DNA of 64,000 nt from the NCBI RefSeq assembly GCF_021869535.1, contig NW_026262690.1:77190001-77254000 (forward strand), in the 5' to 3' direction. The notes below the pieces were generated by a model, which made no database searches, had not been told where the DNA came from, and saw only the letters and a program-made list of their open reading frames with translations. This stretch comes from Mytilus californianus. Taxonomy: Eukaryota. Below, piece after piece: positions 18,775 to 60,000 of the stretch. The position numbers were made by a program, and so were the translations under genes. Within the stretch, counting starts at the first letter, position 1; every line of letters starts with the position of its first letter.

Positions 18775-18781
<7 letters not shown>

Positions 18782-20417
18782 ATCTCCTTTTATTCATATT
18801 AAACTAATACCATTTGTTGGATTGCTGTCTCATTGATATATACCCATCATCTCTTTCTATTCATATTAAGCTAATACCATTTGTTTAGGTCATATTTTTG
18901 TACTTATAATATAATAAATTCTTTAAAAAGCGTATCCGCTATATATTTTATTAATTGGTTTGTGTTTCACAAGGGTTGTTTCCATTTAAGACCAGTAATA
19001 ATTTGTATAGATTTAGGGTTTATGACTTGTCCCAATTCATACTATAAATATTTTTGTAAAACCGAGGTCCAGACCCTCGCAGAAATGAATCCTTTTGGGT
19101 ATCACATTAATGAAGCAGCTTGATTACTTAACATCCAGTGGCAAATACTTCATGCATGTTCAGGACGAAAATAAATTAACAATACCTAAATACAATATGT
19201 AGGTCCTGTATTAGAGGCCGTTCAAGATGAAGGTCCTGGAAATTTGGACTGCTACCGGAAAATCAGGGTATATGATGGAGTAGAAAAGAGAGGGACGAAA
19301 GATACCAGAGGGACAGTCAAACTCATAGATCGAAAAACAAACTGACAACGACATGGCCAAAAATAAAAAGACAAATAATAGTACAGATGACACAACATAG
19401 AAAACCAAAGACTAAGCAACACGAACCCCACCAAAAACTGGGGGTGATCTCAGGTGCTCCGGAAGGGCAAGCAGATCCTGCTCCACATGTGGCAGTTACA
19501 AAGAAACCAAAAGGACATGACCATCTTTCTGTATGTTTACAAAACCTTGAACATTAGACAGACAAATCAGACACAAGATATAGTACAAAATTTATTTCAC
19601 ACATTTTCTTGTATATTACAAATAATAAATATCATGTGAATTGCAAAAAAAAGAAAAATATAAAAAGTTTGTTGGAATCCGAGACATAAAATTGTGTGAA
19701 ACTTGTTTAAACTGAACTTTTGTACAGGAATCTTCAATTACTAATTTAAGATCTCATAGTATCAATACATAAGTTTCTGTAAACAGATTTTAATGTTTAT
19801 AACTTAACTGAAAAATTTGAGCCTCTTCTTTTTTTAAATAAAATTTGTTCATAATGCCCATCTCTTAACATGGATACAAAGTAAAATGAACAAGTATAGT
19901 TTATATAGCACTATTAAAGAAGCAAAGAAAACAGGAAGTCTAGACACTAAACGTATACAAATGTCTGCTTTTCATTAACTTCTCTTTCCATACTTGACTT
20001 TTATAAAGAAATTCACATTTACAGATTCATTGTATTGATAAAAGTCAAAAAGTCAAATTTCCAGTAACTATTTAATATATGCAATTTGTTATTCCACAAT
20101 AAAGCCCAAGTCACAAGCTAATTTCCACCTGATTAGAAAGAATTTAATCTGTATGTTAAATCCAATGTTACTTATAGTGAAATATTCACAATGTATCAGA
20201 CTGGAAAAACAACTTCATTTTGTAAATAAATATAACCTACTGAAGTACACAGGGCACCAGTTTTATTTTAAATTATCATTAGATCACATCAATAAAGGGG
20301 ATATAAAAAGCTTTGTCCTGAACACTTAGTGGATGATAGATTTATGACGAGAGTTTGTAGATGAGTGTCCTATGTGTCACATGTATCTATATACCACCAG
20401 CATGGTCCAAAGGATGA

Positions 20418-38400: not shown

Positions 38401-38598
38401 CATAGTATTTAACGACATTTAGTAGGGTTTAATACACAAATCATCATTCTTGTGACATAAAGTGTATTCAAAGAATGTAACTAATGTAAACAAACCCTTT
38501 GCTGCCGTTATATTGCTGTAACGGATTTGAGTTGGCTTTTCTTTGTCTTTGTACAGAGATCTTGAGGCATTATTCGAAGGTCCTGATTTGCCCTTCAT
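20418..38598 (-). CDS. CCT4: T-complex protein 1 subunit delta, 532 aa, 14 coding exons
   Basis: Exons 38598-38496, 29367-29315, 28271-28182, 27727-27619, 26762-26620, 26001-25880, 25261-25126, 24679-24540, 23958-23862, 23618-23511, 22993-22863, 22268-22034, 21692-21579, 20435-20418 (1599 nt, phases consistent). Motifs [55 protein letters not shown]. Confidence 0.96.
27125..27278. mobile_element. 154-bp MITE (hAT-like CAGGG termini)
   Basis: TIR CAGGGATTGAA / TTCAAACCCTG; direct flanks TATGC at 27120-27124 and 27279-27283. Confidence 0.6.
28358..28640. repeat. MITE-like repeat with ~150-bp palindromic head
   Basis: AAGGAATGAC..AATATTTT ... AAAATATT.GTCATTCCTT inverted arms around TGTGGTGCACAC/GTGTGCACAACA. 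Confidence 0.5.
31245..34763 (-). mobile_element. Full-length piggyBac transposon (3519 bp)
   Basis: TTAA at 31241-31244 and 34764-34767. Imperfect TIRs CCCTTTCA / CACTTTCA. Three AAGGAT.A.TTCGG.AT subterminal repeats at 34671-34757. Contains an intact transposase ORF. Confidence 0.88.
32120..33847 (-). CDS. piggyBac (PGBD4-like) DDD transposase, 575 aa
   Basis: Uninterrupted ORF with catalytic motifs [18 protein letters not shown] and MGGVDHADQ, the KPHKWG motif, an acidic N-terminus and a C-terminal Cys-rich domain ([24 protein letters not shown]). Confidence 0.95.
   Translation of the reverse strand: MSSDESDDFEGFTRAEVDEAEARYEQQLQFQGIGDDTDGNESSEGSDNDIPGPAGDAGNIDGWHEDFSYYERGLPHLFTPTGRTGPTRIMPQDKSPLDFFKLFFNHVLLEMLIEQTDTYAKLQKENHPNENKMPWVRPNIPEMNAFFGLCFEMGVDRKPSTRMYWSTDNFLQSPIYSKTMSRDRFTQLMRYLHFSDSTQQPLPGNENYDPLYKIKPLLTHFNTTFQQEYTPHRNITVDETMIPFKGRVQFKQYMPQKPHKWGVKAWVLADSQQSYIQYVDIYPGRNAIPQTHLGSSVVKRCLENSNLVGKGYHLYTDNFFTSPELFANLFENFGTYACGTVRYNRRGLPKDIMCKKPSGINLRGDMKFRQKGFLVASVWRDKKNVYTVSTIHDHSTSQVKRLVNNDGTFTRQNFECPKAVADYTCNMGGVDHADQYIQYYCYNHKTYKWSKRVFFVLMEMAKFNAFKLFLMSPNHQTNLTFLDFSISVAKGLVNGYISETRRGRPSLMPVENRLVQRHMPASFDKKSKCHLCYMRNRNNRQVPIKQTKFGCLKCVKHLCLPECFSKYHTERNCYN
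35212..35437 (-). pseudogene. hAT C-terminal dimerisation-domain remnant
   Basis: [28 protein letters not shown] is the Dimer_Tnp_hAT signature. The ORF-track start lies inside an inserted MITE. Confidence 0.8.
35438..35549. mobile_element. 112-bp MITE inside the hAT derivative
   Basis: Imperfect TIR GAGGGGGTAGGCCC / GGTCCTACCGTCCCTC; 6-bp TSD AATAAT at 35432-35437 and 35550-35555. Confidence 0.7.
38188..38265 (-). repeat. tRNA-derived SINE head or tRNA pseudogene
   Basis: Pol III A-box TGGCTCAGCGG (38251-38241) and B-box GTTCAATCC (38206-38198), 34 nt apart. I could not form a convincing cloverleaf. Confidence 0.5.
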
Positions 38599-39012
38599 TT
38601 TAGTTCACTTTAAACTGAATAAACTGTTGAAATTTTGTCAAAGATGATGTTGATGGGTTCAGATTAGGCTTGCTTGTTCACGTTGGTTCTCGATCCTTCC
38701 TGATCGCCGGAAGTCAACATTTAACCCCCCTTTTTTCCTATTTTTACTTTGATCTGTTAAATCAGTGAAAATATTTTTCTTATCGGGTAAACATTTTTTA
38801 TTTTTATTAGAATGATGAAATGTGAATGTTGTTAAACGACAATCATGAAAGAAAATATATGTATTTAATTTTCCGGTTCTAAAATCCGTCATTATTTTTT
38901 CTTTTATTATATTGTCTGGGTTATAATGAAGCTTTAATCTTAAAGTATTTGCCTGAAAACATTTTTCTGACAAGGAATATTTGGCGGGAGATCGGAAAAT
39001 TATATATAGAAA
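38599..39012. promoter_or_regulatory. Putative bidirectional promoter CCT4/DTL
   Basis: Only 414 bp separate the divergent ATGs. ETS motif CCGGAAGT at 38707-38714; E2F-type TTTGGCGGGA at 38980-38989. Confidence 0.7.
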
Positions 39013-42000
39013 ATGCTGTTAAAATTCTTAGAAAACAGTCGAAAATTAGGAATAAAATGTAAGTTAATGACACCAGACGATCAAGAAAAATACAAAATTA
39101 CAAACTTAGGCCATGGCCTAAAATGATTTCAAAATCCTATTTTTATCTAAAGTCTTAAAGAGACTGACTATCAGTATCCCATTCCCATATCAAATGAAGA
39201 AATTATATATGATGTCTGATGATGCACTTATAAATATATGAAATCAGAAATGGAAAAGTTATTCTATTTCTTAACAATGCCATTGAAACTAGACTGATAT
39301 TTTCACTGCTAATTAGATTTTTTCCAAAACGGGCCTGGAGTTTTGGTGATAATTCTGATTTTTTTTTATTGCAGCCAACATGATTCTGCCAATTTTCACC
39401 ATCATATCCAACTATAGCGGTCATCACGTGACTTTTACGCTTCAGTTGTATATCATTAATGGCTGATTGATTATCAATGAAAATGATCGGGGAACATAGA
39501 TTAAACGGTCATAACTTTTTTGTTACATTGTGTATTTTACCTCCCAACCCCGCGTTTTACAGTATATTCATTTTTACAATTAAAAATGTTTTAAGTTTTA
39601 GTTCAGATATATGAGTTCTTGCGTCAAAATAAGTTTGAAAATTGTGGTGACATATATAACCACCCAGCCTCCGTTGACTTCTTTGTTAAAACTCGATAAA
39701 ATTGCAATGGGACCTTATTATATAATCAATTTTCTCAACTTATTTATTGTAACTAATATCCTCCCAACCCCTAAAACGATCAACAACATTTTCATATAAA
39801 TGAAATAGAAAACCATATCAGTTTAGGTATCAAACTTTTTGCTTCAAAATTTGATTGAAAAGTTGACATTTTGGCATTCGTTAGCAATATTTTTAACATG
39901 GCGGCCGCTGTTGGAACAGTAAATAACGACTCGACATGCCGGTATTCATTTAGTTATTAATCAAAAAGTAATATTTCAAATTTTTATTGAAGTGTGTCTT
40001 ATTGTATTTAAGAAATTTCTTATTTCACCTTTTCTTTAATATATTTATTAGAAACAGTCTCTCGCACTCAAAATAAAGATTTATATGCATTAACCATGCA
40101 GTTTACATTGACAGCTTGGGCCGACTTGTGAACATATATTTTGTTAGATATTTACGATGAAAATCGAATAAATGTTGGATGCATGCGTTTTCAGTAATTG
40201 TCTTACCTTATAGCAGCATAGAATCAAACATTGTTTCTCTTTGTTAAAGTGGATACATACTGTTTTTTTTTTAAAAATTTTGAAACTACGTAAAAAATGG
40301 TGACCAAATAATTTTCAAACGTAGAAGATGTTCGACACTAATTTTACCCATTCAAATGATTCAATTTGATTTCACTGTTGATATTGCAATTAAGTATGAC
40401 ATGTTATTGTCACTTTAATAATACCCAAGGACATAGCTAGATTAAGGAGATATTAAGTCATCAACGTGATCAAAGAAAACAATCATGGCACCTAATCACG
40501 ATGTAAGTTTTGACAAGACCTGTGTACATGTAGATTAGTATTGTTCGATTCTTATAATGATATTAATTTATGCTATTATTTTATATCAATAAAAGAAAAC
40601 CTCGAATGGATGGTAACCGATGTGAAATATCTATATTTTTCAATTTTCTAATCACACAGGTAACCAGTAAATTTGACATAATTCTTATTAAACCAGTAAC
40701 ATGCAGAGTTATCGAACGTAACTATGACTGAAATAGTTGCATATGGTATGCCTAAACTTGTCCAATATAGTGTGATAATCTTGAGGGCTCTCCTAAATAA
40801 CCATATTAATGCCTCCGGGAAATAATGGCTAATGATCATTAATCTGGAGTCTTGGTCATACATGTAATTCTGAATTTATTTTATATTACAGCCAACACAG
40901 TTCTGGAAATCTCTGAGATCGGTAACGTTAACGAATTGGGTAACCATTACTGAATTAATTAACTGAACCATTAATGAATTCGTTAACTTCAGTGTTTATT
41001 TGGTTTTGGCATTTATAAATAAATATGAAAATGATATGGATTTTGGAACATTTCACATGTTTGATCAGTCAGTTTTTATCAACCCGTAGATAGATTTTAA
41101 TTTTACCAGGAAGAATTCTAGAAATTTGTCTGTAGTTCCAGCTAGATTTTTTCCCAGCATGCCGTTTTTTATTTGAAAATGCCAAAACCAAATAAACACT
41201 GAAGTTAACAAATTCGCTTATGGTTCAGTTAATAAATTTGGTAACGGTTACCCAATTCGTTAACGTTACCAAATTTGTAGATTTCCAGAACTGAATATGA
41301 TTCTGCCAATTTTCACCATGTAGGCCTACACTACATGATTTTGACTTCTTAGATGTCATTTTTGCACAATCATGACCAAGAATATTGCACAAAAATCAGG
41401 ATTTTTGAAAATCTACATGTAGAAATTGGCCTGATTTTCACTTTTCTCAAAGGAGACAACCTTATTCAACTGATCAAAATCTGTCTTTCCTTTCTGTTAT
41501 CAGTTATCTGTAGATTTTGCTCTTGACACAGGCACTGGATAGTCACTCATGTACTTTAAATTGTCTTGAGATAAAAATATGATTTACCTTTGATCACGGT
41601 TTCATCTCCAGATCAATTGAGTTACATGTATACACAAGTTCTGAGATAGTCTGTTTTAAACTCTATACATTGTTGGGATCAATACCACATAGCTGCATAA
41701 AAACATCAATATAAAATGATGTCAACTGTCAAGTTGCAATAGGTTTTCATCAGGGTGTCTGGGGGTCAAACTAGAACAGCGTGGTTGACTTTTTGCTGAA
41801 TTCGCCTGTGTAAAAAACTAGGCACGTGCATAGAAAAATGTCACACTTTGAAACAAAAATTATCCTGGAATTCTATTTCAAACAAGCAAAGATTATATGG
41901 ATATTACAATAATTGTAACTGATCCTTATATTGTTTTCATAATAAAAGTGTTAGTTATTAAAAAATTATCAACTTATTATATAATTAAAACTATTGTCTT

Positions 42001-45000
42001 TTTACAAGGAATCAGACAAATGTTGTTATGTGCCAACTTTAAAAATTTGGAAAAGGTCAATAGTCAATTATACAGGTACATAAGAAAAGATCTTGCTGGT
42101 ATTCTACGTACTTATATTTTTCTGCACAATTGAATAAGTCCATGCAAATAAAAAGGAAGAAAAAAGCTAATTAGCTCATCAGTATACCATAGTAAAATAG
42201 AAGAGATATGACACTATTAGCAGATTAGAGATAAAAAAAAAATGCATGCAACATTGTTAACCTCAAAAATGTAGTCATGTCTTAAAACTCCAATGGAGAT
42301 TTTCATATTAAAGTTGGCATGTGTGATTTAATTTTATCCCATTTGGAATTTGGATTCCAGAGTATTTTATCTGATTTTGGCTGATTTTGGCTGCCCACTT
42401 GAAATGACTTGATACCTTATCAGGCATGTTAATTCTATTTAGGAAAATTTTAACCAACTACCACAGCTTGAACGTGTATTTTACATGGACACCACCAAGG
42501 ATCCGAAAAAATTTTCACACAATTTCGGTCATTTTGAGATGATTTAAAAGTTGGGCCCCTTTTTTCAAACTGTCGAAATTATTCACACTAGATTCAACGA
42601 ACTTGTGTTGACTGTTTCATCCCATTTAATTCATAAATTTTCTCACTGTTTCTCAAAAAACGTTCAAGAACAGTTATTGGAATGCAACAGTTTAAAATTG
42701 AAATGATTTTAATGACTCAAAATGGTAAATTTCACAGACATTGCTAACACTTTTTTCGCCTTTGAAGATGAAACTATAACCGGAATTTTCACGACAATAC
42801 TAACATGAGTAAAGCACTAGTAATGCGGGATTTTTTATTTTATTACCTTTAAATGTGTTTGAATACAGACAATAGTTGCATTCGTTTAATTTAACATGAT
42901 ATCATATTGCATTTTATGATTAAGTGTCTAATCTGTTGAAGACAATTTCACGCATGCGTATTACATAGTAAATAAAGCACATTTCTTTTTTGTGGCGTTA
43001 AAGAAACCCAATCTCAATGAAATGACCGAAATTATTTCTGTAAAAAAATATAATTAGTCCTAAATCCCAATTTGCTGTTTAGGACAAATAGCATTCAGTT
43101 TAGGACATGACTGGCAAATATGACCGTTTCCTGACCCTTTTTTCCTGTTTGAATTGTTTTACACTAGTTAGTCTTTTTGGGGCCCTTTTTAGCTTGCTGT
43201 TAGGTGTGAGCCAAGGCTCCGTGTTGAAGGCCGTATTTTAACCTATAATTATTTACGTTTTACACATTGTGACTTGGATGGATAGTTGTCTCATTGGCAC
43301 TCATACCACATCTTCTTATTTATCATGTTTATATGATAGTTTCCAAAAAAATAAATGCAAATACAAAAAATGCAATATGAGTGTTGAAATCATAACAGAG
43401 ATGAATCATACCTAAAAGCAAGAAAAAAGACCATGCCTGCTGGATACTATCAAATCTTCCCCCTTTTATTTGGCACACGGGGTATATAAGCTTGATTACT
43501 AAAGGTTCTTTAAATCTACATATATATCATGTATATATATATATCACATGGTTGATGGAGACTGACAGATTAGTGAATTTTTCTGTCAATATTTTTATTG
43601 GTAACAGTTGTGATTCATATTTATTACACTTGTGCTGAGTACAATGATACGATTATACATAAAATTGAGAATGGAAATGGGGAATGTGTCAAAGAGACAA
43701 CAACCCGACCATAGAACAGACAACAGCAGAAGGTCACCAACAGGTCTTCAATGCAGCGAGAAATTCCCGCACCTGGAGGCGTCCTTCAGCTGGCCCCTAA
43801 ACAAAAATATATACTAGTTCAGTGATAATGAATGCCATACTAAACTCCAAATTTGTACACAAGAAACTAAAATTAAAAATAATACAAGACTAACAAAGGC
43901 TAGAGGCTCCTGACTTGGGACAGGCGCAAAAATGCGGCGGGGTTAAACATGTTTATGAGATCTCAACCCCCCCCTATACCTCTAGCCAATGTAGAAAAGT
44001 AAACGCATAACAATACGCACATTAAAATTCAGTTCAAGAGAAGTCCGAGTCTGATGTCAGAAGATGTAACCAAAGAAAATAAACAAAATGACAATAATAC
44101 ATAAATAACAACAGACTACTAGCAGTTAACTGACATGCCAGCTCCAGACTTCAATTAAACTGATTGAAAGATTATGTCTTCATCATATGAATATCAGGCA
44201 AAATCCTTCCCGTTAGGGGTTTAGTATCATACCATCATAACATATATGAGAAGAACATAATCCGTGTCATGCCAACAACTGGTTTTTAAATAAATGTGTT
44301 TAGTGCCGATGCAAAGACCCTATAAGTGAATCAATATTAACGCCAAAATATGCAATCTTTAATGACCTGACAACAGTATCGTAACTATATCCCTTCTTAA
44401 TAAATCTATTTAAAGGTTTTGTTAGCTTCAGAGGTGAATACTGACATTTTTGTGCTTTATAAAGAATATTGACATGTATATTTGTAATCTGTGCTAATTT
44501 TAAATCCTTTATTATAGCAGAAAGTAATGCCATAAAACATTAAGCTTAAACATTATCATGATTACAGTGTTTGCTAATTGTTACCTGTATGCCTGGTATT
44601 TAAGTATTTTGCTGGAACTGATTCCTTAGGAAGTGAACCCAAATATATATTTTCAGAACTGGTTGTAGATAACAACATAAACCTTTTGAAATGGCATCAA
44701 TAATAGATACACCAGGCTCAAAAGACAGCAGCACTCTACAATTTTACTCAGAAGAGAACTGGGGATTGGATTTCTATTTCCAGACATACAATAAAATGTT
44801 TGTTTCTGATATTTTATCCATGAGTGAATATCCAATGTTCCCTGGCGCATACATGTACAAAAATCATCCAGTATACAAAGTAGATGTAGTAGGTGTAATC
44901 GTAAAAGTAGATCAGAATTCTAAATGTTTTATGTATGAAGTGGATGATGGCACAGGTGTAGTTTCTTGCAGTTGCTGGAAATTTTCATACTCGGACAAAC

Positions 45001-48000
45001 ACTATGAAAATGTTAGAAACGATATGTGCAAGCTTCCTGTTGAATTACAAAGGAAGTTCAAATCTTTAGATAAAACTGAAGAATTCAGTGGCTATACTTT
45101 GGGCTGTGTTATTCATGTTCGTGGGAAAATAAGTATATTTCGAGAGAAAAGACAGATTGTAGCAGCAAATCATCAACTTGTAAGTGATCCAATGTTAGAA
45201 GTCTTTCGGATGATGGAATTGCCTAAATTGTACCAAATGAAATATGATAAACCATTTGAACTACCGTGGAAAGTTGCAAAAAAGTTAATGAGTAAAGCTG
45301 ATGAGAATGATTTAAATACAAATGATATGAAGGAGGTAAAAACCACACTATATGGACATTTACAATCATCAGATATTGTAGAGGTTACTGCACATGTGGC
45401 ATTAAAATTAGAAAGTTTGGAGGCAATAAGGAATAGACTCAATTCAGAAATGCTACACAAATGTATTGAGGAAGTTTTGATTTCTTTAGAAGACGACGGC
45501 TTTCTTTGCAGAAGGATTGAAAACGATAAAGTGTTTGAAGTATTGCGTAAAGATTGTGATTTAGAGAAAACAATACTTCATATTTTAAAGGAAGAATGTA
45601 GTAAAGAAAAATACATAGATAAGGGATGTCATTATATGCATGTGATTGACATTTTACATAGAACATACCAATACTCTCATGTTAAAAAACAATGTGTTAT
45701 GTACTGTTTGGATAAACTGGAATTACAGAGTGATATTATAAGGTCAACAAAATGTCATTATTTGCCAATAAATTATTCATAAATTGACAAGAAATCAGAT
45801 ATCCAGTTATTCGTTTAAATGTACATAATCACTGATTATGTAGGGTATACCTTGTACATCAATGAGACACAACACCCAAAAGAAACCAATAAAACGGAAA
45901 AGTCACCTAGCTGGCAACACGTTATTTTTTTTTGTTTTTTTTTGTTTTTTTCTAAAGATGCTAAAATACTGTATCTTTCAGAATTCATGTATTTTATTTT
46001 GATGTTATATTTGTTATTCTCGTTGGATTTTGTCAAATGTCTTAACGTCTTTTCTGTTATATTCGTGTGTTATGGTAAAGATAATTAATAACCCCCTCCA
46101 TTTATTAGATTTTAGTTTGGTTCGACGATATTTATACAATATAATTGGTTTACAGTTTGATTCAGAAGAAACACCGACATAGCTAGATAATACAATTAAT
46201 TATCTAAATACTACCACAATTTGATAATAGTATTGTAATTTTCATTGTTATTAATAAATGTAATGTCAGTATTACAAATCTAATCTTGTATCAATCCTAA
46301 TTCTATCTTATTTTTGGTAAATATTTTTACAAATTCAAAATGAAATGTGACGTCACTTTGTGTGTTTTTTTAGAATTTCAAATGTGATGTCACTTTGTGC
46401 GTTGAGGCTTTGGCTAACTCGGCAGTGTATTTTTATGTGTTGGATTAAGTTGTTTTATGTAATGTATCCGTTTTTATTCTGTAGTTAGTCCCCACTTCGG
46501 TTTTATCATGTATATCCATTATATAGTCATTTTATAAAATTTACTGTTTGCAAAAGTATAAATTATTCTAAATAATAAGGATGTTTTTGTCCCAGGCAGA
46601 AAATCCTGGCCGTGTTAGGCGCAACTTTTTGGAAGTTTTGGTCCTCGGTGCTCTTCAGCTTTGTACTTGTTTTGGCTTTCAAACTTTTTTCATCTGAGCG
46701 TGACTGGTTAGTCTTGTGTGGGTGAGACGCACGTCTGGCGTAATAAATTTTAAACCTAGTACCTTTTGTTAGCTATTATTCGTGTGTTTCTTTGTCCTAT
46801 ATGTTCTCCCATTTATTTGTATTGTAGTCATGTCATGTAATGTTGTCATTTTAATGTTATATTTAACATTGCCATGAAAGCGGGAGGTTTGGCATGCCAC
46901 AAAACCAGGTTCAACCCACCATTTTTTTCTTAAAATGTCCTGTACCAAGTCAGGAAAATGGCCATTGTTACATTATAGTTCGTTTCTGTGTGTGTTACAT
47001 TTTAATGTTGTGTTTTTGTTGTGTCGTTGTTCTCCTCTTATATTTGATGCGTTTCCCTCAGTTTTAGTTTGTAACCCGGATTTGTTTTTATCTCTATCGA
47101 TTTATGAGTTTCGAACAGCGGTATACTACTGTTGCCTTTATTTACATGATATATTTTAAGCTCTAAATCGCATTTGGCTTATGTTTATTTTTTTATTATT
47201 GGCAAAGTTATCATGAAAAAACTAACAAATATCATGAATCGTGTGAATATGATATGTTGCTAAAAACTGATTTACATACAGTGTACAGGATTTGCCAAGA
47301 CAAAATCAATAAATTTTATAAATAATTGTTACAGCATACATGTAAACCATTGTTATGTCTTGGTGGCCTTACTAAGCATAAACATAACCAGTTGTTGGCA
47401 TGACACGGGTTATGTTCTTCTCATATATGTTATGATGGTATGATACTAAACCCCTAACGGGAAGGATTGTGCCTGATATTCATATGATGAAGACATAATC
47501 TTTCAATCAGTTTAATTGAAGTCTGGAGCTGGCATGTCAGTTAACTGCTAGTAGTCTGTTGTTATTTATGTATTATTGTCATTTTGTTTATTTTCTTTGG
47601 TTACATCTTCCGACATCAGACTCGGACTTCTCTTGAACTGAATTTTAATGTGCGTATTGTTATGCGTTTACTTTTCTACATTGGCTAGAGGTATAGGGGG
47701 AGGGTTGAGATCTCATAAACATGTTTAACCCCGCCGCATTTTTGCGCCTGTCCCAAGTCAGGAGCCTCTAGCCTTTGTTAGTCTTGTATTATTTTTAATT
47801 TTAGTTTCTTGTGTACAATTTGGAGTTTAGTATGGCGTTCATTATCACTGAACTAGTATATATATTTGTTTAGGGGCCAGCTGAAGGACGCCTCCGGGTG
47901 CGGGAATTTCTCGCTGCATTGAAGACCTGTTGGTGGCCTTCTGCTGTTGTCTCTTCTGTGGTCGGGTTGTTGTCTCTTTGACACATTCCCCATTTCCATT

Positions 48001-51000
48001 CTCAATTTTATAAACCCTCTAGGGAAGCACAACATATTAATTGCAATACTTTTCTTTCAAATAGCTCTTGATAAAATTTCAATTGCAAGACAGTCTTCTA
48101 CTTCTATTGTCCAGGGGCAGATTGGCATGGGTTGTCCTCAGATTAATAGAAATAATAAAATGAGATATTCACAGGGAAAAATGACATTGTTACTAAGGTT
48201 TTGAATCAAATGAGAGAGAGAAAATTGATATACAAAATAAATTATGATTTTGAGAGTACTCTGTTTAAAACAAAAGTTTGAGTATTTTAATCTAACATGA
48301 ACAAACACCTCTGACATATATATCTGTTAAATAAAATGTAACATTACAACACAAACATGATACATTCTGTTGTTTCTTTACAGTATGAGGCAAAATGTGT
48401 GTTCAAAAATTACAAAAGAAGTGGTGTACTTTAAACAAAAAGCTTATGAAATACTAAGAAATATATTACAATGTAGTTATGTGTATCAATATGTGTGTTG
48501 TCAGAGTTATCATGGTTATGGTCTACACAGTGGAATTTATCTTGTTATACATTTAGTATATAAGATATATGATTTGTTACATATGGTTTTGTGAAGAATT
48601 ATATTTGTTATATGTATTTGCCTGCTTCTGGACCTATACAGATATTTTTTCTATGCAAGGTTTTTTTTCTTGTGGTATGTGTCTGTTTTACAAGCATTGA
48701 AATAAATGAAAATAACACTAGTAAATTTTGTGCATCCAAAGCACTTTTCTGGCTTAATGTTCATCAAGAAAACTCAAACCCAAGTGATTGATGTGAAAAT
48801 TCTTGATTACTAGGAGAAGCTACATGTATATAAACAAAAGGGACACAAAAATAATATTCAAATAACCTAAGGTCAACTTTGCCAGAGCGATTTAAAAGCT
48901 TTCTTAATAATTTCTAAATCTATATATATCAACAGAGAATGATAAATCAAGACAGTACAAAAGCACAGAATTCTGATAATACCCTTGGTGACTAGAAATC
49001 TTCTAGTAGAGGTTTAGACCCAATGCTACATTGTAGAAAATGAAAATTACACTATGAATTTGGTGCATCTAAAGCACTTTCCTGGATTTACCTTCATCAG
49101 GAATGCTCAAACCCAAAAATTTGAATCAGTGATGTATAAATGAATACTTGAGGAGATATATTACCAAAAGGGACCTTAAAAGAATAGCCAAATGAAAATT
49201 TTGAATCTATAGGTTTCACATGTTTCATAGATCAATTTTTATTAATGAGCAAAATTTTAGCTGCAATTCTTTGTTGTACACATCTTTTCTCAAACTAACA
49301 AATAAAAAGTGAAGAAATGGCAACACAGAATAGTAAACACAAGCATAGTGCAGTGTAAAATGTATTGTCAAACTTTGATGATCAGAATACCAAGTGACAA
49401 TCTGAAATAGTTTGAGTAATATTGGCAGAAAGTTTTACATTTTGTAAAATTTTATCAGTTGGATGAAAAGCACACATTTGTACAAATATGAAATGTTATA
49501 CTGCAGTATGGCAGAAAAGTTCTGACAAATTTGGGAAGTCATATTGTTGTCTTTTCTTCTGTAACATGTATTGATAATATTTTTACCTGCAGGCTACTCT
49601 CCACAATTATTTTCACAACTGTTGGAGCAGTATGAATCGTCTATTTATGATGAGTATGGCATAGAAGGTGAAGAGGAAGGGGTAAGTAGCTTTAAAGTTA
49701 TTAATTTGGGAACCAAAAGTAGTCCTTGAATTAAACCACTAGGAATATTTAAAAAATCTATAGTTTCATCACATGACAAGGAAGTTTTTCAGATATTTTA
49801 GAAGAAGGAAATATTAACCTTCTTTTTTAGCTCACCTGGCCCAAAGGGCCATGTGAACTTTACTCATCACTTTGGTGTCCGTCGACGTCTACTGTCAAAT
49901 TTTACAAAATTCTCCTCAGAAACTACTTGGCCAAATTTAACCAAAATTGGTCACAATCATCATGGGGGGGCATCTAGTTTAAAAAATGTGTTCGATGACC
50001 CCACCTGCCTACCAAGATGGCTGACATGGCTAAAAAAAGAATATATGGGTAAAATGCAAGTTTTGTCTATTTTTCTGAAAACCGTTTTAAATAGAGAAAA
50101 TCTGACAAGGTATAAATGTTCAAAATGCTGAGCTCTACCAATTGTGCATATATGTCAAAACTGTCAGACGATTCTCTATCAGAGTTATTGCCCTTAAATA
50201 ACCTTTTTTTTTTCATTTTTGCCTATTATCTTGAAAACTATAATAGATAGAGAGAAACTTTAAAATGCAAAAATGATCAGAAAGACAAATTCTACAAGCA
50301 AGTCTAATGGTTGAAATCGTCAGTTGACTCCTTATTAGAGTTATTGCCCTTTGATGACGATTTATACAATTTTTTTCCGTTTTTGCCTTATATCTTTAAA
50401 AATTATAATATATAGAAAGAAACTTAAATAAACAAAAATGTTCAGCAAGACAAGATCCACAATTATGACAAATGGCGGAAATCGTCTGACTACTCCTTAT
50501 TGTAGTGATAGCCCTTTAATGATGATTTTTACCATTTTTTTTGTGTTATGCCTTATATGATAAAAATTATAATAGATAGGTAGAAACTTAAGCCCTTATA
50601 GTTAGTAGACTGTCACTCTTTATAGGAGTGATTGCCCTTAAATTAGGAAAAAATTAGCAAAAACTAAATAAGATAGAGAGAAACTAAACAGACAAAATGA
50701 TCAGCAATATAAGATAAAACGATTTTTGTCATTAATTCTATTCTCGTCTACAATGTTGGAGAGTGTCCTTTGTTGAATATGCATATAGACCAAGGTGAGC
50801 GACACAGTCTCTTTACAGCCTCTAGTTACATTGCTTTTTAGTCCCCTACCAACAGAGTTGAAGGGGACCTTAGGTTTGTAAAGTCCATCTGTCTGTCTGT
50901 CTGTCTATCTGACCATGGTCCAGCAAATCAGTTTTCCTCACTTTTTTAGCTAACCAGGCCCAAAAGAGGTCTTAAGAGCCTCTAGTTTCTTCGGTCTTGA

Positions 51001-54000
51001 AGATATTGATTTGATATTTGGTGTATTGTTTTATCATGACAAGTTACAGATCAAGTTAAAATTTTGTTCCAGTCTGATGGTTTTGTGCAGAGTTATGGTC
51101 CTTAGACTTAGAAAGTTCACTTAAATAATCAATTTTTTAAACACTTTTTTTCATCATGCTTGAAGTTATTTATTTGATAATTGGTATATAGTTTTATCAT
51201 GACCAGTTACAGATCAAGTTCGAATTTTGTTCCGGTCTGATGATTTTGTGCAAAGTTATGGTCCTTGGACTTGGAAAATTCACTTAAATAATCAATTTTT
51301 CAACACTTTTTTTCGTCATGCTTGAAAATATTGACTTGATATTTGTTAAATAGTTTACACCATGACAAGTTATAGATCAATTGGCATTTTGTTCCAATAC
51401 AATGAATTTTTAACCGGTAGTGGGCTATGTATTGCCATGCAATACTCTCAAGAATTCTTGTTGTTCTCATATTTATGCCAAAGCAAAGTTTTCAGGCATG
51501 TAGGAATTACCAGTACCATGTGTCGTACAGGAAAGAAGAGTTCATTGTCTGTTTTGTGTCAAAATTTGTGATGTGATGTATATAATTCTTTGGATACACA
51601 GATAAATTCAACCAGAAAGAAACCTTTTGTGAGGGTAATTGTTCACTGAATAACTATGTTTACTGTATTTTTTCTGGGACAACAATTTTTTGTATTCAGT
51701 TATTGTGTTTTCTTTTTCAGTCATCTGTACCACCATTGGCGTGTGAATTTTCTAAAGGTAAGACCCAATCAGCTATATGGGTGTCTATCTGTATTGAGAT
51801 AATAAATGAGAGTTTGCTCACTAGATAAACACAAACAGTCAAACCTGTATTAAGCAGTCACTCTTGGGAAGTATCAAAAGTGACCGCTCAACAGAGGTGA
51901 CCTTTTAAAAGAGGTTCCGAATAATTTCGGTTCTGACATCTCACATAGTCGGGATTGGAGTAAATTGTTTAAGTGTTTTCAATTAGCCCAGTTATTGTCC
52001 TTGCGAGCCGTGAATGAAAAATATGCAGATTCCTGTGCTGTAAATATGAAGAAAACATCAAATTATGTTATTCATGGAGAAATAAGTCAGTACGGTTTTC
52101 AATGGAAACTGAAAGGAGTGGAACATGAGGAATTCACGTATTCACCTCCAGTATTGTGCTATCTTGGTTGCAAATGAGTTCTGGCTTTCATTTCTCTTTT
52201 GATACTGAACACATATGTTTTTTGTCATGATTATTTTGGTAGCTAAACACATTAGAATGGCCGTTAAAAGTTGAAATGATGATTTCATGTGAAAATTAGG
52301 TGACTGCGACTGCGTTAGACAGGTGCCTGCTGAAAAGTATTAAATTTTCTAGAGAAAACATTTGGGAGGGTCTGAAAGTGCCTGTTAGAGGCAGATGACC
52401 CTTAAGGCAGGTTTGACTGTATCTTACATGAGAATATTATTCATACAATTTCTGTGATTTTTTTATTGAACAAAAAGAACAATGAATTTTTTTACATCAG
52501 TATTTTATTGTGAAATGTAAACATCTCCAAATCCTTTTATGAAGTAAATTGTTAAACAGCATGACTTTTGTATGGGTTAACTTTGGAGGTGACCTTTAGT
52601 ATATATGTTCATTTGTAAGTTATTGTGAAAAAAAGGAAGTATGTTATTAATTTTGTACACATTTAATAATATGTTTTGTGTATCATGTGTATAGGACATT
52701 ATTGAATTATTCAGCCTTTTACATCTTACAGAAAAGTCTTCTTCGCACATCCTTGGTCTAGTTGATGAGAATGGTTATGTGGTCATCTATAATACAAACA
52801 AATATGGACAGGAAGCTATTGTAAAAGGTTGGTTTCTAGATACATGTACAAGACAATGCAAGTATAAAAAATCTTACCTTATGAAGTATGCATTTGCATA
52901 GATTTATTTACAATTTTCCTCATCATCAGTATCAGTCAAAAGATCTGTTTATATTTGAATTGCTTTATAGAACAAATTTATTTCAACTACAAATACAATT
53001 ACAAAAGAAATGTCGTCAGTAACTTGTTTGAAATTTGCTGCTATGAAATGTTGAAAATCATTTCAGCATCAGGAATATATCTCCCTCATTCAAAGCTCTG
53101 ATTCCTTGTTCAGATCTGGCTATACTTTAGATCCTCTTTGGTTTGTTCAGCTCTTCAAAGTTTGTATAAGTATTGGTTTTCCAAATATTTTGTTGAAATG
53201 CACATCTGGTGCAGTAAAAATTGGTTCCTTGAATGTTATTACCCTGTTATAGATATTTGGTTCGTAGTAGGACAAAACAATTTCAATAATTTCAAGAACA
53301 TTGAACAACAATTCAAAAGTAATGATGAGTGATTCCATTGCAATGTTCTGATGTCAAAATGTTATAAAACAAATGAACACTTCAGATTGGAGAGCTCATA
53401 GTAATGCTATATTTGACTTGGCATGGATGGGTGGAGACAACAAACTTTTATCAGCAGCAGGGGACCAGACTGTTGTATTATGGGATGTTCCCACTGCTAA
53501 GAAAGTCAACAGTTTCCAAGGTCATACAAGCAGTGTTAGATCTGTTAATTTCAAGACTAATGATCCAGGTTAGTAATACATTTATAATGGCAAAAATAAA
53601 GAAACATATTTGGGCAACCAATTGACACCATTTTTAGCTCACCTGGCCCAAAGGGCCAAGTGAGCTTTTCTCATCACTTGGCGTCCGTCGTCCGTCATCG
53701 TTAGCTTTTTACAAAAATCTTCTCCTCTGAAACCGCTGGGCCAAATTTAACCAAACTTGGCCACAATCATCATTAGGGTATCTTGTTTAAAAAATGTGTC
53801 TGATGACCCCGCCAACCAACCAAGATGGCCGCCATGGCTAAAAATAGAACATAGGGGTAAAATGTAGATTTTGGCTTATATCTCTGAAACCAAAGCATTT
53901 AGAGTAAATCTGACCGGGGTAAAACTGATTATCAGGTCAAGATCTATCTGCCCTGAAATTTTCAGACAAATCTGACAACCTGTTGTTGGGTTGCTGCCCC

Positions 54001-57000
54001 TGAATTGGTAAATTTAAAGAAATTTTGCAGTTTTTGGTTATTATCTTGAATATTATTATAGATAGAGATAAACTGTAAACAGCAATAATGTTCAGCAAAG
54101 TAAGATCTACAAATAAGTTGTCATGACCAAAATTGTCAGTCGACCCCTTTAGGAGTTATTGCCCTTAATAGTCAATTTTTAACAATTTTTTGTAAATTTT
54201 TGTAATCTTTTACAAAAATCTTCTTCTCTGAAACTACTGAGACAAATTTAACCATACTTGGCCATAATCATTATTAGGGTAACTAGTTTAAAAAATTTGT
54301 CCGATGACCCGTCTTCCAACCATCATGGCCGACATGGTTAAAAATAGAAGATAGGGGTAAAATGCAGTTTTTGGTTTATATCTCTGAAACTAAAGCATTT
54401 AGAGCAAATCTGACAGGTTGCAAAAATGTTCATCAGATTTAGATTTATCTGACCTGAAATTTTCAGACGAATCGGACAACCCGTTGTTGGGTTGCTGCCC
54501 CTGAGTTAGTAAATTTACAAAAATTTTGCAGTTTTTTGTTATTATCTTAGATATCATTATAATATCTAATATCTTATACTATTAATTATGATTTTAACCT
54601 TATTTTACATGATTTCCAAAGCATCAGTAAATACAGGTGAGCGACACGGGCTCTTGAGAGCCTCTAGTTTAGGAATACTGGTACATTGATTCTAGAAGAT
54701 GTCTTCATCATTTATGAAATTAGGACTTTTCTAGATGAGGAATGGCAATATTAGTGCTATCTGTTCATATTGGTTATCTCCAAGTAGAGACAGTTTTATT
54801 GCCATATTGACACCAATCTAAATTGGATTGTTTTATTATTGAATCACATCATAAATGAAATGTGTTCTTGCACAAAAAGTAATGATTCATTTCTTGATAT
54901 CAGAATGTCCATTTATTTTGACCTTTGAAATATCAGTTTATAAGGTGTGATCCTTTTCAGAACATGATCCAAATATTCAATAAGGGTTATTCTCATCTAT
55001 TCGTTTATCTAACAAGTGTAATTTTATGTTGTTGATTTTATATTACAGCTGTGTTTGCTACAGGATCTAGAGATGGACATGTGATGATATGGGATATTAG
55101 ATGTAACAAGAAAGGTAACTTGTTATTTGTATAAAATATTGGCAGATTATAGGTCCTTTAATTGTTAAAATAGGTGAGATCCTAGGTTCCTTTAATCTAG
55201 TAAAAAAAATGATGACAAGTAGGCTGGAACCTCCCCTGAAAAAAGCAAGTTTATTCTCATTTTAGTCTCGTAAAAAAAACAACACAAAACATCTATATAC
55301 AGTTCATGTCATTTAGCTAGTTTAATTTCTATTTATGTAGCATAAAGAAATATTATGATAACCATTTCTGCATGTGATCAGTATTTCACTTTCATCATCA
55401 TGTAATGTAAAATTACAGGAATCTAATTAGTTAGACCTGATAATTTGAAGTTATTATTCCAATTTTAATGGTTTGTTGAAAAAGTATTGGCCAGTGGCTT
55501 TTAAATACATGATTTATTCAAATTTTATGTTTTTATTAAACACAACTCCATGAAAATGTGTACCCTACAAATAAAAGAACTTTGACAGTATTGTAAAGAT
55601 GATGAGCTATAGTTTTCAGCATGAAATAACTGATTTAATTTGAACATTCTTGGTAAAATCATCTTAAGGACAAACTTGTACCTTATGAACACTTTAACTA
55701 ACCTACATGACTAGTGTTACAATAAAAAGAACAGGGAGGAATGATATATATATATATACTATTGAATTAAGAGTGAAGACATTTGAACAGTGCAATGCCT
55801 TTAGTTTGCACTGTACAAACTGAATTCTTGAATCAGGGTATGCCATGCATATTCTTCAGTAAATTTATATAAACTGTCTTGCATGTATCTTTGATAACAA
55901 AATCCTATGGCTTGAAGATGCTCAGTTTTGACAGTTTTCATTGTAAAATATTTAATACATATAAACAACAAAATCTTTTTTGCACTATTCACACTATTTG
56001 TAATAACAGTATATTATATTTCAGGATTATATACCTCCCCTGTACAAGTCATCAAAAATGCACATTCCATTCCACATATACTGAAAGCCAAGAAGAAATC
56101 AAAACTTGGTCCATCAAGAGTATGTATAAATATTTGTGTACTGGTGTATGTTCAGCCTCCTATCTGATTAAGAAAACTTAACACAAAAAGTACATAGACT
56201 TTTCATGTTAATATTCATTTTGTTATTGTCTCACTTGTGAAGAAAGTTGCAGAATGCAAGAAATATGGATATGACAGCTTTAATTATTTGTTGTGGACAA
56301 AAAAAAACCTGGATACTTCATATCTTGTATACAGATGCTTGTGAAGTTTCAGTATGGCATATATATAAGTTGTTGTTGACTTCATTTTCATGGTTCAGTG
56401 ACTGCATATAACACTTAAGTTTTTTTGTCATGATGATATTTCTTTCAGAGGTAGAAAAACACATTTTAGTAAATATTATTATATTTAAAATATCACTTTT
56501 TATTTCTTTATTTCAAAGATACTTATTTGAAATTTATAAATCTTGTGCAGTAATCATAATCTGTTATAGAAATGGTGTTAAATAGTAAAATATTTTATTG
56601 TAGGATAGCCAACAAAGTGTGACTATAGTAGTGTACCAAACAGACATGACCTTACTATCTGCAGGAGCTGTTGATGGGTTAGTATAAAATACAATTTATT
56701 AACTGATAAGGATGAATACAAACTTCTGTATTTTGGTTCAAATGTAGAGTAAACATGGTAAAGGGTGAAAACTTGAAACAGAATTGATGACAAACATAAA
56801 AGAAGTTAAATTAGAATAGTCCAGTCTTTGGGATGCACCTGTATATTTATAACAAGGAAGTCCCCATGTTTGGATTGTTCCCGACTTTTATCTGCTGACA
56901 CAAGTGTCTTTTATATCAGTGTAAGATCAGCAGACAGTGCTTATTTAGATATTTTGGTGTTTTTCAGTAGCCTGGATAAATAATATATTTTATAACTCTT

Positions 57001-60000
57001 TGCAGATGTGTTAAAATGTGGGATTTAAGAAAAAATTACAGTTCCAGTATACCTGATCCAATGGCTAAGCACACATTTAATTACAGTGGAGTAAATAAAC
57101 GATCGCATGGTAGGTTTGTCATTTAAGTATGATTGGTGTAGGTCAAATTGCTGAATATAGAAATGCTTTGAATTTTATTTTTTTCTGAATGAAAACTGCT
57201 ATTAGTTCAAGTCAAATATAGGTATGAAATTAATGATTAACATAATTGTATTTGTTGTACACCCTATATCATTTACCATTTTAGGCACCTTCCTTTGAGG
57301 TACATTCAGTGGTACCTATTTTTTATAAGCTGTTAAATATTTAATTTTGTCTACCATAGGATACTCCAGTCTGGTATTAGATTCCAGTTGTACCCAGTTA
57401 TTTGCAAGCTGTACAGATGATATCATATACCAGTATAATCTACTCTCTCTAGATCCTAAACCAGGTATAAACTTATTTCTAGATTGAGTCAATAGACATG
57501 ATAGAATATATTAAAATCTTGAAAAGATCAAAACAATGTTAACTGTCTCAGCTCCCCTTAAATGATATTGGAACAGTTTTAAAAAATAAGACCTGTCTAT
57601 AAAGTTATTGCTGTAAATTCAAATGTTTAGCTGAGCTTGAGACAAATGAATTTCGTTTAAACATCAACATTTCGATTTCTAGACAGAATCTTCATCTTAA
57701 CCAACCTTGGCTCCATGATGCAATTGAAAGAGGAATAACCCTATTGAGTATGGGGTCAAAGGTCAAGGTCACAGCAGTTATTCACTGATTGTTATCTTTT
57801 AACAATGTGTCTTAACTTTTACTGATCCTGGTTTATTAATGCCTCATGGGATGAGCCATAAATGACATCTTTCCCTATCTTTGATTGATAACGCAATGTG
57901 AAATAGAACCATATTGATTTTTAGGTCAAATATGGTAACTCTACTTATACACTGGCATTTGTGTTCTACTTGTAGTTTGACTAATCAGTATAATATAACT
58001 TCTTGTAGAATTGAATTTATATTTGATTTATTTTTTTCAGTGGCACACTTTAAAGGACACCAGAACAAGTCATTTTATGTAAAAGCAGCAATAAGTCCAG
58101 ATGACCAGTACTTACTTAGTGGATCCAGTAATGAAATGGCCTATATTTGGAAGGTACTAACAGAAAATAGATAGTCAAACAGCTATTGTTAGCTTTTTCA
58201 TTCATCCGTCATCAGCAGAACCTACCCAAATGATTCATTGATTTTTTTCTCATTATTTACACATAACAAATATTTTATCATTGAACGTTAAGCCAAAAAC
58301 AGTCAATCCTTGGTTGTAGCAAGTGTTCTTTATAGTTCAAATTAAGATTAATCTGTTGCTGTATTATAATATTAAACATGAGATGACAAACCAATCGATT
58401 TAAGTTGTACATTGATATGATTTCAGATTACTAAACCTAATGAAAGTCCTGTCGTTCTTAAAGGTCACAATGCTGAAGTGACTGACGTTTCATGGAATTG
58501 CAATGATTTCACTAAGGTAAGTCTTTGGTAAAATTAACAAAACGGCAGAAGTACAAGTGATTCATTGTGTTTAAAAAAGGTTTAGAAGTGCCAAGGAGGG
58601 CAATCAAAAACCAAAAGTTGAAGAAAACATCATGGCCAAAAGAAAAAGGCTGCTAAAAACAGGTGAACTCCAGTGCTCGGAATGGTAAGAAGTTTCTGCT
58701 CTTCTAGTTGCACCAATGTATACATGCATACTTGGAAACAAATAGCAAAAGTAGTAAAAAGATTTTGTTTTACTCTAGAATTGTTCACAGATAGATTTTT
58801 TAGCCATAATTCAAACTTAGAGACTGAAAAGCATTACTACTTCAACAATGATTTCCTACTAGCATAAGCATACATGTGGTGCAAAGGCTTGACTTGAAAT
58901 TTGTAACAAATAATCAAGTTTATCAAGTGTGTATTTTAAAGTATGCTGATTGAAGTAATAAGGATGTATTTATGTGGAATGCTTTTCCACTGCATTCAAA
59001 AACAATTTGAAGAGAAAAAAATGTAAGGATGGATTAGTTAGAAGACTAATCAGTTTTGCAAATTTATTTAAAAATCGAAGAATATGCTTTATGTAGATTT
59101 TTTTGTACCTTCACCACCTATACATAAATGTTCAGTGCATAAAGCTTGCTCCAATTTTTCAGCCTCATTTTATTTTTCTAAAGTCAACATTCAGTAAACA
59201 ATGATCTTGCTGTTACAGCTTGCAACTTTATCCGACGACAATACAATGAGGATATGGAGACTGAACAGACGATTGGAACCAAGGTTACCAAGAGAAGTTA
59301 CTGGATATTCTGAAAGAACTCACAGAGAAATAGGTAATCTTAATCTGGTAGAAAATCTTAACAACAAATCTGATAAAATGATTTCATTGATAAAGGTAAT
59401 TGTGCTTTCAGAAAGGATTTTAGGGAGAAATTTTGTGACACTTTTTTTAACAATGTTACATCTGTAAAGTCTTGACTGTTAATTATTGATTTTATGCAAT
59501 TGTGTAATTTCTTCGGATATCTTATATAAGGATTATGTTTATGCCATCACTGTTTTGTATTCCTGTACAGTTATAAGTCCATTGTTGACAATAAATTTAC
59601 TTTACATTATTCTTGTTTCTGGAAAGCTTCAAAACTTAGAATATAAAGGAACTTCTGTTCTGAATTTATCAAATGGAATCAGGGGAAATGAATTTATTTG
59701 TGCATAAAACTGGTTATGAAATAATCAAAGGGAACAGAAGGTGTAACTGAGAAATTTCTGATTAACTTACTTCTTTTTTTGTCTCTTTTAGGTATATCTG
59801 CAAGTCAACAAGTGGAAGTAACACCAAATAAAATACCATGTACCCCTAAGACTGTATCTCCATCAATACTTCATTTCCTGAGCAAGAGTGCGCAAAAAGC
59901 AACCTGTGATAAGACTACCAAGCTAGATAACAAATCTGATGTAAAGGAAGGTAGTAAAAGCATAGATAATTCATGTGATCGCAATATTTCACAAAGTACA

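What the first reader, a model, noticed from the sequence alone, without database searches (positions are those of the whole stretch)
39013..49592. STN1 nested same-strand in DTL intron 1; splicing DTL exon 1 to the STN1 exon creates a stop codon at the junction
Seen in sequence: DTL exon 1 (MLLKFLENSRKLGIK + T, donor GTAAGT at 39059) joins in phase to exon 2 at 49593. Inside that 10.5-kb intron, on the same strand, are an acceptor (44655-44656), the complete STN1 ORF and an AATAAA. If the DTL donor uses this acceptor, T+AA forms TAA exactly at the junction. That leaves a 15-codon uORF, 32 ATG-free nucleotides, then the STN1 ATG in strong context (GAAATGG). Established: short uORFs permit re-initiation; DTL/CDT2 (CRL4 PCNA-coupled degradation) and STN1 (CST, Pol-alpha fill-in and fork restart) both act in S phase. 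Inference: one promoter and first exon may yield either DTL or STN1 mRNA through an alternative terminal exon choice, coupling the two genes. I do not recall this arrangement being described, but could not search.
Basis: partly seen in the sequence, partly recalled or inferred. Interest (0 to 1): 0.85.

Follow-up and report, generated by a model that had tools for sequence, protein, structure and literature searches.

The report
STN1 retrogene sharing DTL's first exon

Summary

**Structure**
- The window comes from Mytilus assembly GCA_021869535.1.
- DTL exon 1 is 39013-39058 (15 codons plus T, donor GTAAGT). It joins exon 2 at 49593.
- An independent M. galloprovincialis "denticleless" protein begins with this same exon 1/exon 2 junction. 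It matches human DTL at 4e-120.
- A complete, intronless STN1 ORF (44691-45782) lies inside that intron on the same strand. It matches human STN1 at 6e-45 and has dN/dS 0.12.
- STN1 in Solemya has at least 6 coding exons, so the mussel gene is most likely a retrogene that replaced its parent.

**Transcript evidence**
- One contig from a run of a near-identical mussel joins 39058 to the acceptor at 44657.
- A transcript contig from a distant relative (60% STN1 identity) joins a DTL-exon-1-like 30-mer to the same acceptor, again giving T|AA.
- Unspliced contigs also exist in RNA runs, so an additional promoter inside the intron is not excluded.
- The only raw-read run had no coverage, so isoform ratios, transcription start sites and poly(A) sites remain unknown.

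**Verdict**
This is a new member of a known kind, comparable to ChAT/VAChT and to chimeras between a retrocopy and its host gene. The host's start codon becoming a junction-closed uORF is an unusual detail. The "ATG-free leader" is not conserved. Interest is moderate.

The parts
38980..38989 (+). E2F-like motif TTTGGCGGGA in the CCT4/DTL intergenic promoter region, 24 nt upstream of the DTL ATG
   Evidence: It is the only match in the 64-kb window (0.07 expected) and is identical in M. edulis. Function is inferred, not tested.
39013..39058 (+). DTL exon 1 coding part: ATG plus 15 codons plus T (phase 1). In the STN1 transcript it becomes a 15-codon uORF.
   Evidence: The gene call in the public collection starts at this base. 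The M. galloprovincialis denticleless N-terminus uses it. It is conserved with its donor in M. edulis.
39059..39064 (+). Splice donor GTAAGT shared by the DTL and STN1 transcripts
   Evidence: It is the joint's left end in X2.
43659..44284 (.). Left arm of a 626-nt inverted repeat (a high-copy expressed repeat) upstream of the STN1 exon
   Evidence: 97-99% complementary to 47386-48011. Depth reaches hundreds to tens of thousands in all four runs.
44557..44656 (+). Conserved 3' end of the upstream intron part, with pyrimidine/AT tract and acceptor AG at 44655-44656
   Evidence: About 90% identical at aligned bases to relatives whose synonymous sites are 68% identical.
44657..44690 (+). STN1 5' leader. 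Its first two bases complete the junction stop T|AA, followed by 32 nt without an ATG.
   Evidence: It is the joint's right side in X2.
44691..45782 (+). Complete intronless STN1 ORF (363 aa plus stop)
   Evidence: dN/dS is 0.12.
45767..46258 (+). Candidate STN1 3' end region with AATAAA at 45767, 45888 and 46253
   Evidence: Usage was not tested.
47386..48011 (.). Right arm of the inverted repeat. It is absent from the M. galloprovincialis-like relative.
   Evidence: In L002 the STN1 stop lies only about 1.1 kb from DTL exon 2.
49593..49681 (+). DTL exon 2 (acceptor AG at 49591-2, donor GTAAGT at 49682)
51721..61544 (+). DTL exons 3-15 (WD40 propeller and C-terminal tail)
   Evidence: tblastn of P0195 against the window. 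Human DTL matches at 4.4e-120.
38422..38598 (-). First coding exon of CCT4, head-to-head with DTL (414 nt between the two start codons)

Best explanation
Mussel STN1 is a functional, intronless gene lying in intron 1 of DTL on the same strand. It is most probably a retrocopy that replaced its multi-exon parent. It has no coding exon of its own upstream.

At least part of its mRNA is made from the DTL promoter. DTL exon 1 (ending at 39058) is spliced to the acceptor at 44657 instead of the one at 49593. The transcript then presumably ends at a poly(A) site after the STN1 ORF, making this an alternative terminal exon.

In that mRNA the DTL start codon and its 15 codons are closed by a TAA formed across the junction. 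STN1 must therefore be translated by re-initiation or leaky scanning.

Shown here: the gene structure, the identities of both genes, purifying selection, conservation, and the junction itself in two species.

Inferred: use of the shared promoter (E2F-like site), the poly(A) choice, the mode of translation, and coupling of the two genes in S phase.
For: - Structure and identities.
- The public gene call and the M. galloprovincialis protein both start DTL at exon 1. The register against human DTL (mussel residue 20 = human residue 23) needs those 15 codons.
- Spliced contig in X2: exon 1 to the STN1 exon, depth 6.5. It is the only contig on 44657-44850 in that run, with no coverage upstream beyond the repeat tail.
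- Spliced contig L010 in a distant relative uses the same acceptor, whereas L003, L007 and L011 carry the intron there. Its upstream 30-mer is 19/30 identical to the exon-1 end. Only 5 of 127,940 window 30-mers reach that, and of 3,461 followed by GT only exon 1 itself does.
- Nesting, exon 1, the donor and the acceptor are conserved in M. edulis-like and M. galloprovincialis-like DNA.
- STN1 dN/dS is 0.12.
- Solemya STN1 has at least 6 coding exons over 14 kb.
- No second Mytilus STN1 appeared among the homologues.
- Precedent for the mechanism: Carelli 2016, PMC4772013.
Against: - Only one contig per species supports the junction. X2 is labelled 'RNA?' by guess.
- The one raw-read RNA run (X21) had zero depth on both exon 1 and the STN1 5' end. 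There are therefore no read counts, no strand information, no TSS and no 3' end.
- Sister runs of L010 gave contigs unspliced at the acceptor (L011 with 315 nt upstream, L007 with 16 nt). STN1 RNA starting inside the intron, or pre-mRNA, therefore also exists.
- About 100 nt upstream of the acceptor are conserved above the neutral level, which would also fit an internal promoter.
- L010's upstream exon is identified as DTL exon 1 only by a 30-nt resemblance.
- Extra upstream ATGs in the leaders of relatives argue against a finely tuned re-initiation design.
Confidence: 0.72

Rival explanations
1. STN1 is mainly transcribed from its own promoter within DTL intron 1, just upstream of 44657. The exon 1-STN1 junction is then a minor by-product of DTL pre-mRNA meeting a good acceptor. 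This rival overlaps with the best explanation, because both routes may coexist as they do in VAChT.
For: - Contigs from RNA-run siblings are unspliced at the acceptor (L011, L007).
- 100-150 nt upstream of the acceptor are conserved above the neutral level.
- L008 ends about 20 nt after an AATAAA yet is unspliced at its 5' end.
Against: - In X2 the STN1 5' end is covered only by the spliced contig, with nothing on the non-repeat intron next to it.
- The acceptor and the junction stop persist at 60% protein identity.
- The unspliced contigs may be DNA or pre-mRNA. L002 runs on through DTL exon 2 into intron 2.
- The 250 nt upstream of the acceptor contain no CpG, which is weak evidence.
Confidence: 0.35
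2. The junction contigs are assembly artefacts or come from a processed DNA copy, and the two genes are merely nested.
For: There is one contig per run. Both start exactly 30 nt before the junction, which is the graph overlap length. X2's library type is a guess.
Against: - Both joints fall exactly on the GT donor and AG acceptor predicted beforehand from sequence.
- They come from two species and two studies.
- A 30-nt start is what a real branch in a k=31 assembly graph gives.
Confidence: 0.05
3. The main role of the proximal acceptor and poly(A) site is to attenuate DTL by premature termination in intron 1, and STN1 output is secondary.
For: Any use of 44657 plus an STN1 poly(A) site necessarily removes a DTL mRNA. 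This follows from the structure.
Against: The STN1 ORF is under purifying selection and appears to be the only STN1 gene, so its expression cannot be incidental. There are no data on isoform ratios.
Confidence: 0.1

Closest known systems
Cholinergic gene locus (VAChT inside the first intron of ChAT)
   Same: - The whole ORF of the nested gene lies on one exon inside the host's first intron, on the same strand.
- Transcripts of both genes can share an upstream exon and promoter.
- Alternative splicing and promoters inside the intron also contribute.
- The two products act in one pathway (PMC3053374).
   Different: - There the shared exon is non-coding, as far as I recall. Here it carries the host's start codon and 15 codons, which become a uORF closed at the splice junction.
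- The cholinergic arrangement runs from nematodes to mammals. This one has so far been seen only in mussels and is derived, since Solemya STN1 has introns.
Retrocopies in host-gene introns expressed as chimeric transcripts with the host's upstream exons (e.g. Taf9 in Ak6), and orphan retrogenes
   Same: An intronless copy sits in an intron, is spliced to the host's upstream exon and so borrows its promoter. The parent gene has been lost and the copy has taken over (Carelli et al. 2016, PMC4772013).
   Different: - Those cases are mammalian. This is a bivalve case involving a conserved telomere and replication factor, and a host gene from the same S-phase process.
- Hallmarks of retroposition (poly(A) remnant, target-site duplications) were not found or sought here. 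Only the loss of all introns was shown.
uORF-controlled mRNAs translated by re-initiation
   Same: A short (15-codon) upstream ORF with an A at -3, a stop well before the main ATG, and a main ATG in a good context.
   Different: - The uORF is simply the host gene's N-terminus, so its conservation says nothing about a regulatory role.
- The spacer is short (32 nt).
- Relatives add further upstream ATGs.
- There are no translation data.

Membership tests
STN1 (CST complex subunit) | N-terminal OB fold and C-terminal winged-helix domain, colinear with known STN1 | tested here: met
   Pfam STN1_2 at 1.2e-20, the OB-fold family (PF01336) at 6.8e-08 and Stn1 at 7.4e-06. Human STN1 structures match at 6e-45 over residues 23-357.
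STN1 (CST complex subunit) | Functional gene: intact ORF under purifying selection | tested here: met
   The ORF is intact in 8 sequences. dN/dS is 0.12 at dS 0.41.
DTL / CDT2 (CRL4 substrate receptor) | WD40 propeller orthologous to human DTL, including the N-terminal register | tested here: met
   The M. galloprovincialis orthologue P0195 is 87-100% identical to the window's exons. It matches human DTL at 4.4e-120, with residue 20 aligned to human residue 23.
Retrogene (processed copy) | Lacks the introns present in orthologues | tested here: met
   The ORF is a single exon here and in L002, L003 and L006. Solemya velum has at least 6 coding exons over 14 kb.
Retrogene (processed copy) | New genomic location relative to the parent | tested here: inconclusive
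   No DTL or CCT4 exons lie within 10 kb of Solemya STN1. The flanks examined are short, and no other outgroup locus was examined.
Retrogene (processed copy) | Poly(A) remnant and target-site duplications | not tested
   These are expected to have eroded, since the insertion predates relatives at 58-61% identity. Only a T-rich tract at 45920-45950 was seen.
Orphan retrogene | Parent gene absent from the same genome | tested here: inconclusive
   The only Mytilus hits are orthologues of this gene. That search works by shared words, and no whole-genome tblastn was possible.
Nested gene sharing the host's first exon (ChAT/VAChT type; retrocopy-host chimera) | Nested in the host's first intron on the same strand, with the ORF on one exon | tested here: met
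   The same holds in M. edulis.
Nested gene sharing the host's first exon (ChAT/VAChT type; retrocopy-host chimera) | Transcript joining the host's first exon to the nested exon | tested here: met
   X2 contig joining 39058 to the STN1 exon. L010 in a distant relative. There is one contig for each.
Nested gene sharing the host's first exon (ChAT/VAChT type; retrocopy-host chimera) | Common transcription start and promoter | not testable with these tools
   There were no raw reads on exon 1. Only an E2F-like motif was found.
uORF / re-initiation control | The uORF is translated and limits downstream initiation | not testable with these tools
   Only sequence was available: context A at -3, 15 codons, a 32-nt spacer.

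The most novel reading that the evidence does not exclude
STN1 in mussels has no promoter of its own. It is made only as the alternative terminal exon of the E2F-driven DTL transcription unit. The DTL/STN1 ratio would then be set by the choice between acceptor 44657 plus its poly(A) site and acceptor 49593. STN1 dosage would be held low by the DTL-derived uORF. On this reading the locus is an obligate two-gene S-phase unit maintained across Mytilidae since the retrocopy replaced its parent.
Probability: 0.3. Interest if true: 0.65.

Novelty: new member of a known kind. Interest (0 to 1): 0.5.

Why it matters
The case shows how an essential, low-abundance genome-maintenance gene can survive replacement by a promoterless retrocopy. 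The copy landed in the first intron of a gene with the right cell-cycle regulation and spliced onto its first exon.

It is a natural animal example in which two replication-linked genes share one 5' exon, and in which the host's start codon is neutralised by a stop built at the splice junction.

It also matters for annotation. Three mussel annotations handle this locus differently:
- M. coruscus: an STN1-DTL fusion.
- M. edulis: a chimera of STN1 with a transposable-element ORF, and a DTL model without exon 1.
- The window's own assembly (GCA_021869535.1): the two genes called as nested.

Tried and rejected
1. Raw-read RNA run X21 gave zero depth on exon 1 and on 44651-44850. It therefore yielded no junction counts, TSS or strand.
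2. Seven Logan/ENA contigs carrying STN1 ORFs of relatives (L002, L003, L006-L009, L011) are unspliced at the acceptor and are DNA or pre-mRNA. They helped with conservation but not with splicing.
3. A search for short N-terminal STN1 fragments, meant to find more spliced contigs, returned one unrelated-length hit.
4. The exhaustive representative search with a 66-aa WD40 exon was swamped by generic multi-repeat WD40 proteins. All 150 listed hits were useless, and this was a poor choice of query on my part.
5. DTL exon 2 alone against PDB gave nothing. The M. coruscus fusion protein served as a spliced reference instead.
6. A junction pattern matching both spliced forms found nothing in JGI metagenome contigs.
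7. The run accessions were not found in the papers library, so the library types of the Logan runs remain unknown.
8. NCBIfam has no model for either protein.
9. I considered an in-frame STN1-DTL fusion through the weak donor at 45730, as in the M. coruscus model P0044. I rejected it as a prediction without transcript support.
Full report
**What is in the sequence**

- An ATG at 39013 opens 15 codons (MLLKFLENSRKLGIK), followed by a single T at 39058 and the donor GTAAGT.
- An acceptor AG at 44655-44656 precedes AACTGG. Joining 39058 to 44657 therefore writes TAA across the junction.
- 32 nt without an ATG follow, then the ATG at 44691 in the context GAAATGG.
- That ATG opens a 363-codon ORF ending at 45782.
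- AATAAA occurs at 45767 (inside the end of the ORF), 45888 and 46253.
- The acceptor at 49591-2 puts T+GC (Cys) in frame with the next DTL exon, which ends at 49681.

**Identity of the two genes**

- The nested ORF is a full-length STN1. Pfam STN1_2 scores 1.2e-20, together with the OB fold. The match to human STN1 structures is colinear at 6e-45.
- The window belongs to Mytilus assembly GCA_021869535.1. There the public gene calls give a 735-aa WD40 protein whose coding range starts exactly at 39013 and encloses the STN1 call.
- The M. galloprovincialis protein named "denticleless" (P0195, 735 aa) begins MLLKHLETSRKLGIKCYSPH..., which is exon 1 joined to exon 2.
- P0195 maps to 15 coding exons between 39013 and 61541 of the window.
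- P0195 matches human DTL at 4.4e-120, with mussel residue 20 opposite human residue 23. The 15 codons of exon 1 are therefore needed for a normal N-terminus.
- CCT4 lies head-to-head upstream, with 414 nt between the two start codons.
- A TTTGGCGGGA motif of E2F type sits at 38980-38989. It is the only match in the window and is conserved in M. edulis. DTL being an E2F target is my own knowledge and was not tested here.

**Origin of the nested gene**

- STN1 is uninterrupted here, in M. galloprovincialis/edulis-like contigs (89% aa identity), and in three contigs from more distant relatives (58-61%).
- In the protobranch Solemya velum the gene has at least 6 coding exons over 14 kb, with no DTL or CCT4 exon within 10 kb.
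- No second Mytilus STN1 turned up.
- The ORF evolves at dN/dS 0.12.
- The simplest reading is an old retrocopy that landed in DTL intron 1 and replaced its parent, i.e. an orphan retrogene. Only the loss of introns is actually shown.
- Nesting is conserved in M. edulis: exon 1 at L005 8970-9015, STN1 at 18323-19415, exon 2 near 20530.

**Is exon 1 really spliced to STN1?**

I laid four runs on 38851-44850.
- The raw-read RNA run had no depth at all on exon 1 or on the STN1 5' end, so it says nothing.
- In run X2 one contig (303 nt, depth 6.5) carries 30 nt ending at 39058, then AACTGGTTGTAGATACATG, then 44670-44850 with 3 differences. X2 is kept as contigs and its library type is guessed to be RNA.
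- The first 13 of those 19 letters equal 44657-44669. The joint is therefore 39058^44657, with a 6-nt insertion in that animal.
- This contig accounts for all the depth on 44651-44850. The adjoining intron has only the tail of a high-copy repeat.

A second, independent piece of evidence came from Logan contigs of a relative with 60% STN1 identity.
- L010 reads TACAAAGTAGCCAATGGTCAGGAAATAAAT|AAACCATGAG....
- L003, L007 and L011 carry ...tttaatttcag|AAA... at the same point. L010 is therefore spliced at the homologous acceptor.
- Its upstream 30-mer is 19/30 identical to the last 30 nt of the window's exon 1. Only 5 of 127,940 window 30-mers reach that level. Of 3,461 followed by GT, only exon 1 itself does.
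- In the same phase it reads ...SGNK+T, and T|AA again makes the stop.

Both contigs begin exactly 30 nt before the joint. That is what a branch in a k=31 assembly graph produces when one exon has several continuations.

**What is not shown**

- There are no read counts, TSS, strand or 3' end.
- Sister runs of L010 yielded contigs unspliced at the acceptor.
- About 100 nt upstream of the acceptor are roughly 90% conserved at aligned bases, against 68% at synonymous sites. Splicing signals or an internal promoter could each explain this.
- STN1 may therefore have two sources, as VAChT does.
X2's animal has an ATG-TAA insertion, one M. galloprovincialis-like allele starts the exon with AAATGG, and L010 has a second 17-codon uORF ending 1 nt before the STN1 ATG.
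- The junction stop is kept in the 89% and 60% relatives. In L006 the exon starts with GCT and a stop follows three codons later.

**Mechanism (inferred)**

- Transcription starts at the CCT4/DTL bidirectional promoter.
- After exon 1, the spliceosome uses either 44657, followed by cleavage after the STN1 ORF to give STN1 mRNA, or 49593 to give DTL mRNA.
- In STN1 mRNA, ribosomes starting at the DTL ATG (A at -3) stop at the junction TAA. A stop there lies downstream of the only exon-junction complex, so nonsense-mediated decay should not be triggered. That rests on the established 50-55-nt rule and is my inference.
- STN1 is then reached by re-initiation over a short spacer or by leaky scanning, which fits a low-abundance protein.

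**Comparison with known systems**

- The closest analogues are the cholinergic locus and retrocopy-host chimeras.
- In the cholinergic locus the single-exon VAChT ORF sits in the first intron of ChAT, with shared upstream exons plus promoters inside the intron (PMC3053374).
- Retrocopies in introns can be expressed as chimeras with the host's upstream exons, for example Taf9/Ak6. Related to these are orphan retrogenes that replace their parents (Carelli 2016, PMC4772013).
- No paper linking STN1, DTL and Mytilus was found.
- I therefore file this as a new member of a known kind. The unusual detail is a coding host exon turned into a junction-closed uORF. The appealing feature is that host and guest both serve S-phase genome maintenance.

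**Limits of the work**

The right arm is missing in a close relative, so the repeats are not part of the conserved arrangement.

Noticed in passing
window 43659-44284 and 47386-48011: A 626-nt inverted repeat pair (97-99% complementary) brackets the STN1 exon. The element is very highly represented in all four runs. The right arm is absent from an M. galloprovincialis-like relative, where the STN1 stop lies only about 1.1 kb from DTL exon 2. The pair is therefore young and lineage-specific. It could still affect splicing or back-splicing of the STN1 exon in this species.
   Followed up: partly
P0044 (M. coruscus CAC5391605.1); window 45729/45730 to 49593: The M. coruscus annotation fuses STN1 residues 1-346 in frame to DTL exons 2-3 through a weak donor (AGA|GTGATA). 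It looks like a gene-prediction artefact, and no transcript evidence was seen.
   Followed up: partly
L005 (M. edulis CAJPWZ010001621.1) 10001-19421: The M. edulis 'STN1' model is a chimera of a transposable-element ORF (endonuclease-like N-terminus) with the C-terminal 70% of STN1. The assembly has a frameshift near L005 18647. The neighbouring DTL model (719 aa) lacks exon 1.
   Followed up: partly
window 38598-39013: CCT4 (minus strand) and DTL (plus strand) start codons are 414 nt apart, which suggests a bidirectional promoter. This region holds the only TTTGGCGGGA motif in the window.
   Followed up: partly
window 45767-45772: An AATAAA lies inside the last codons of STN1, 8 nt before the stop, and is conserved in the 89% relatives. 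If it is used, the mRNA would have almost no 3' UTR. L011 ends 22 nt after its stop.
   Followed up: no
L010 1235-1259: The spliced contig of the distant relative diverges from its sister contig L007 31 nt after the stop codon, after ...cactgggtttat. This could be an allele, an insertion or another joint.
   Followed up: no
window 39251-40450: Low plus-strand-compatible RNA depth (2-5) appears in several runs at 94-95% identity, with fixed differences. It is either intronic pre-mRNA of a diverged allele or a repeat copy from elsewhere.
   Followed up: no
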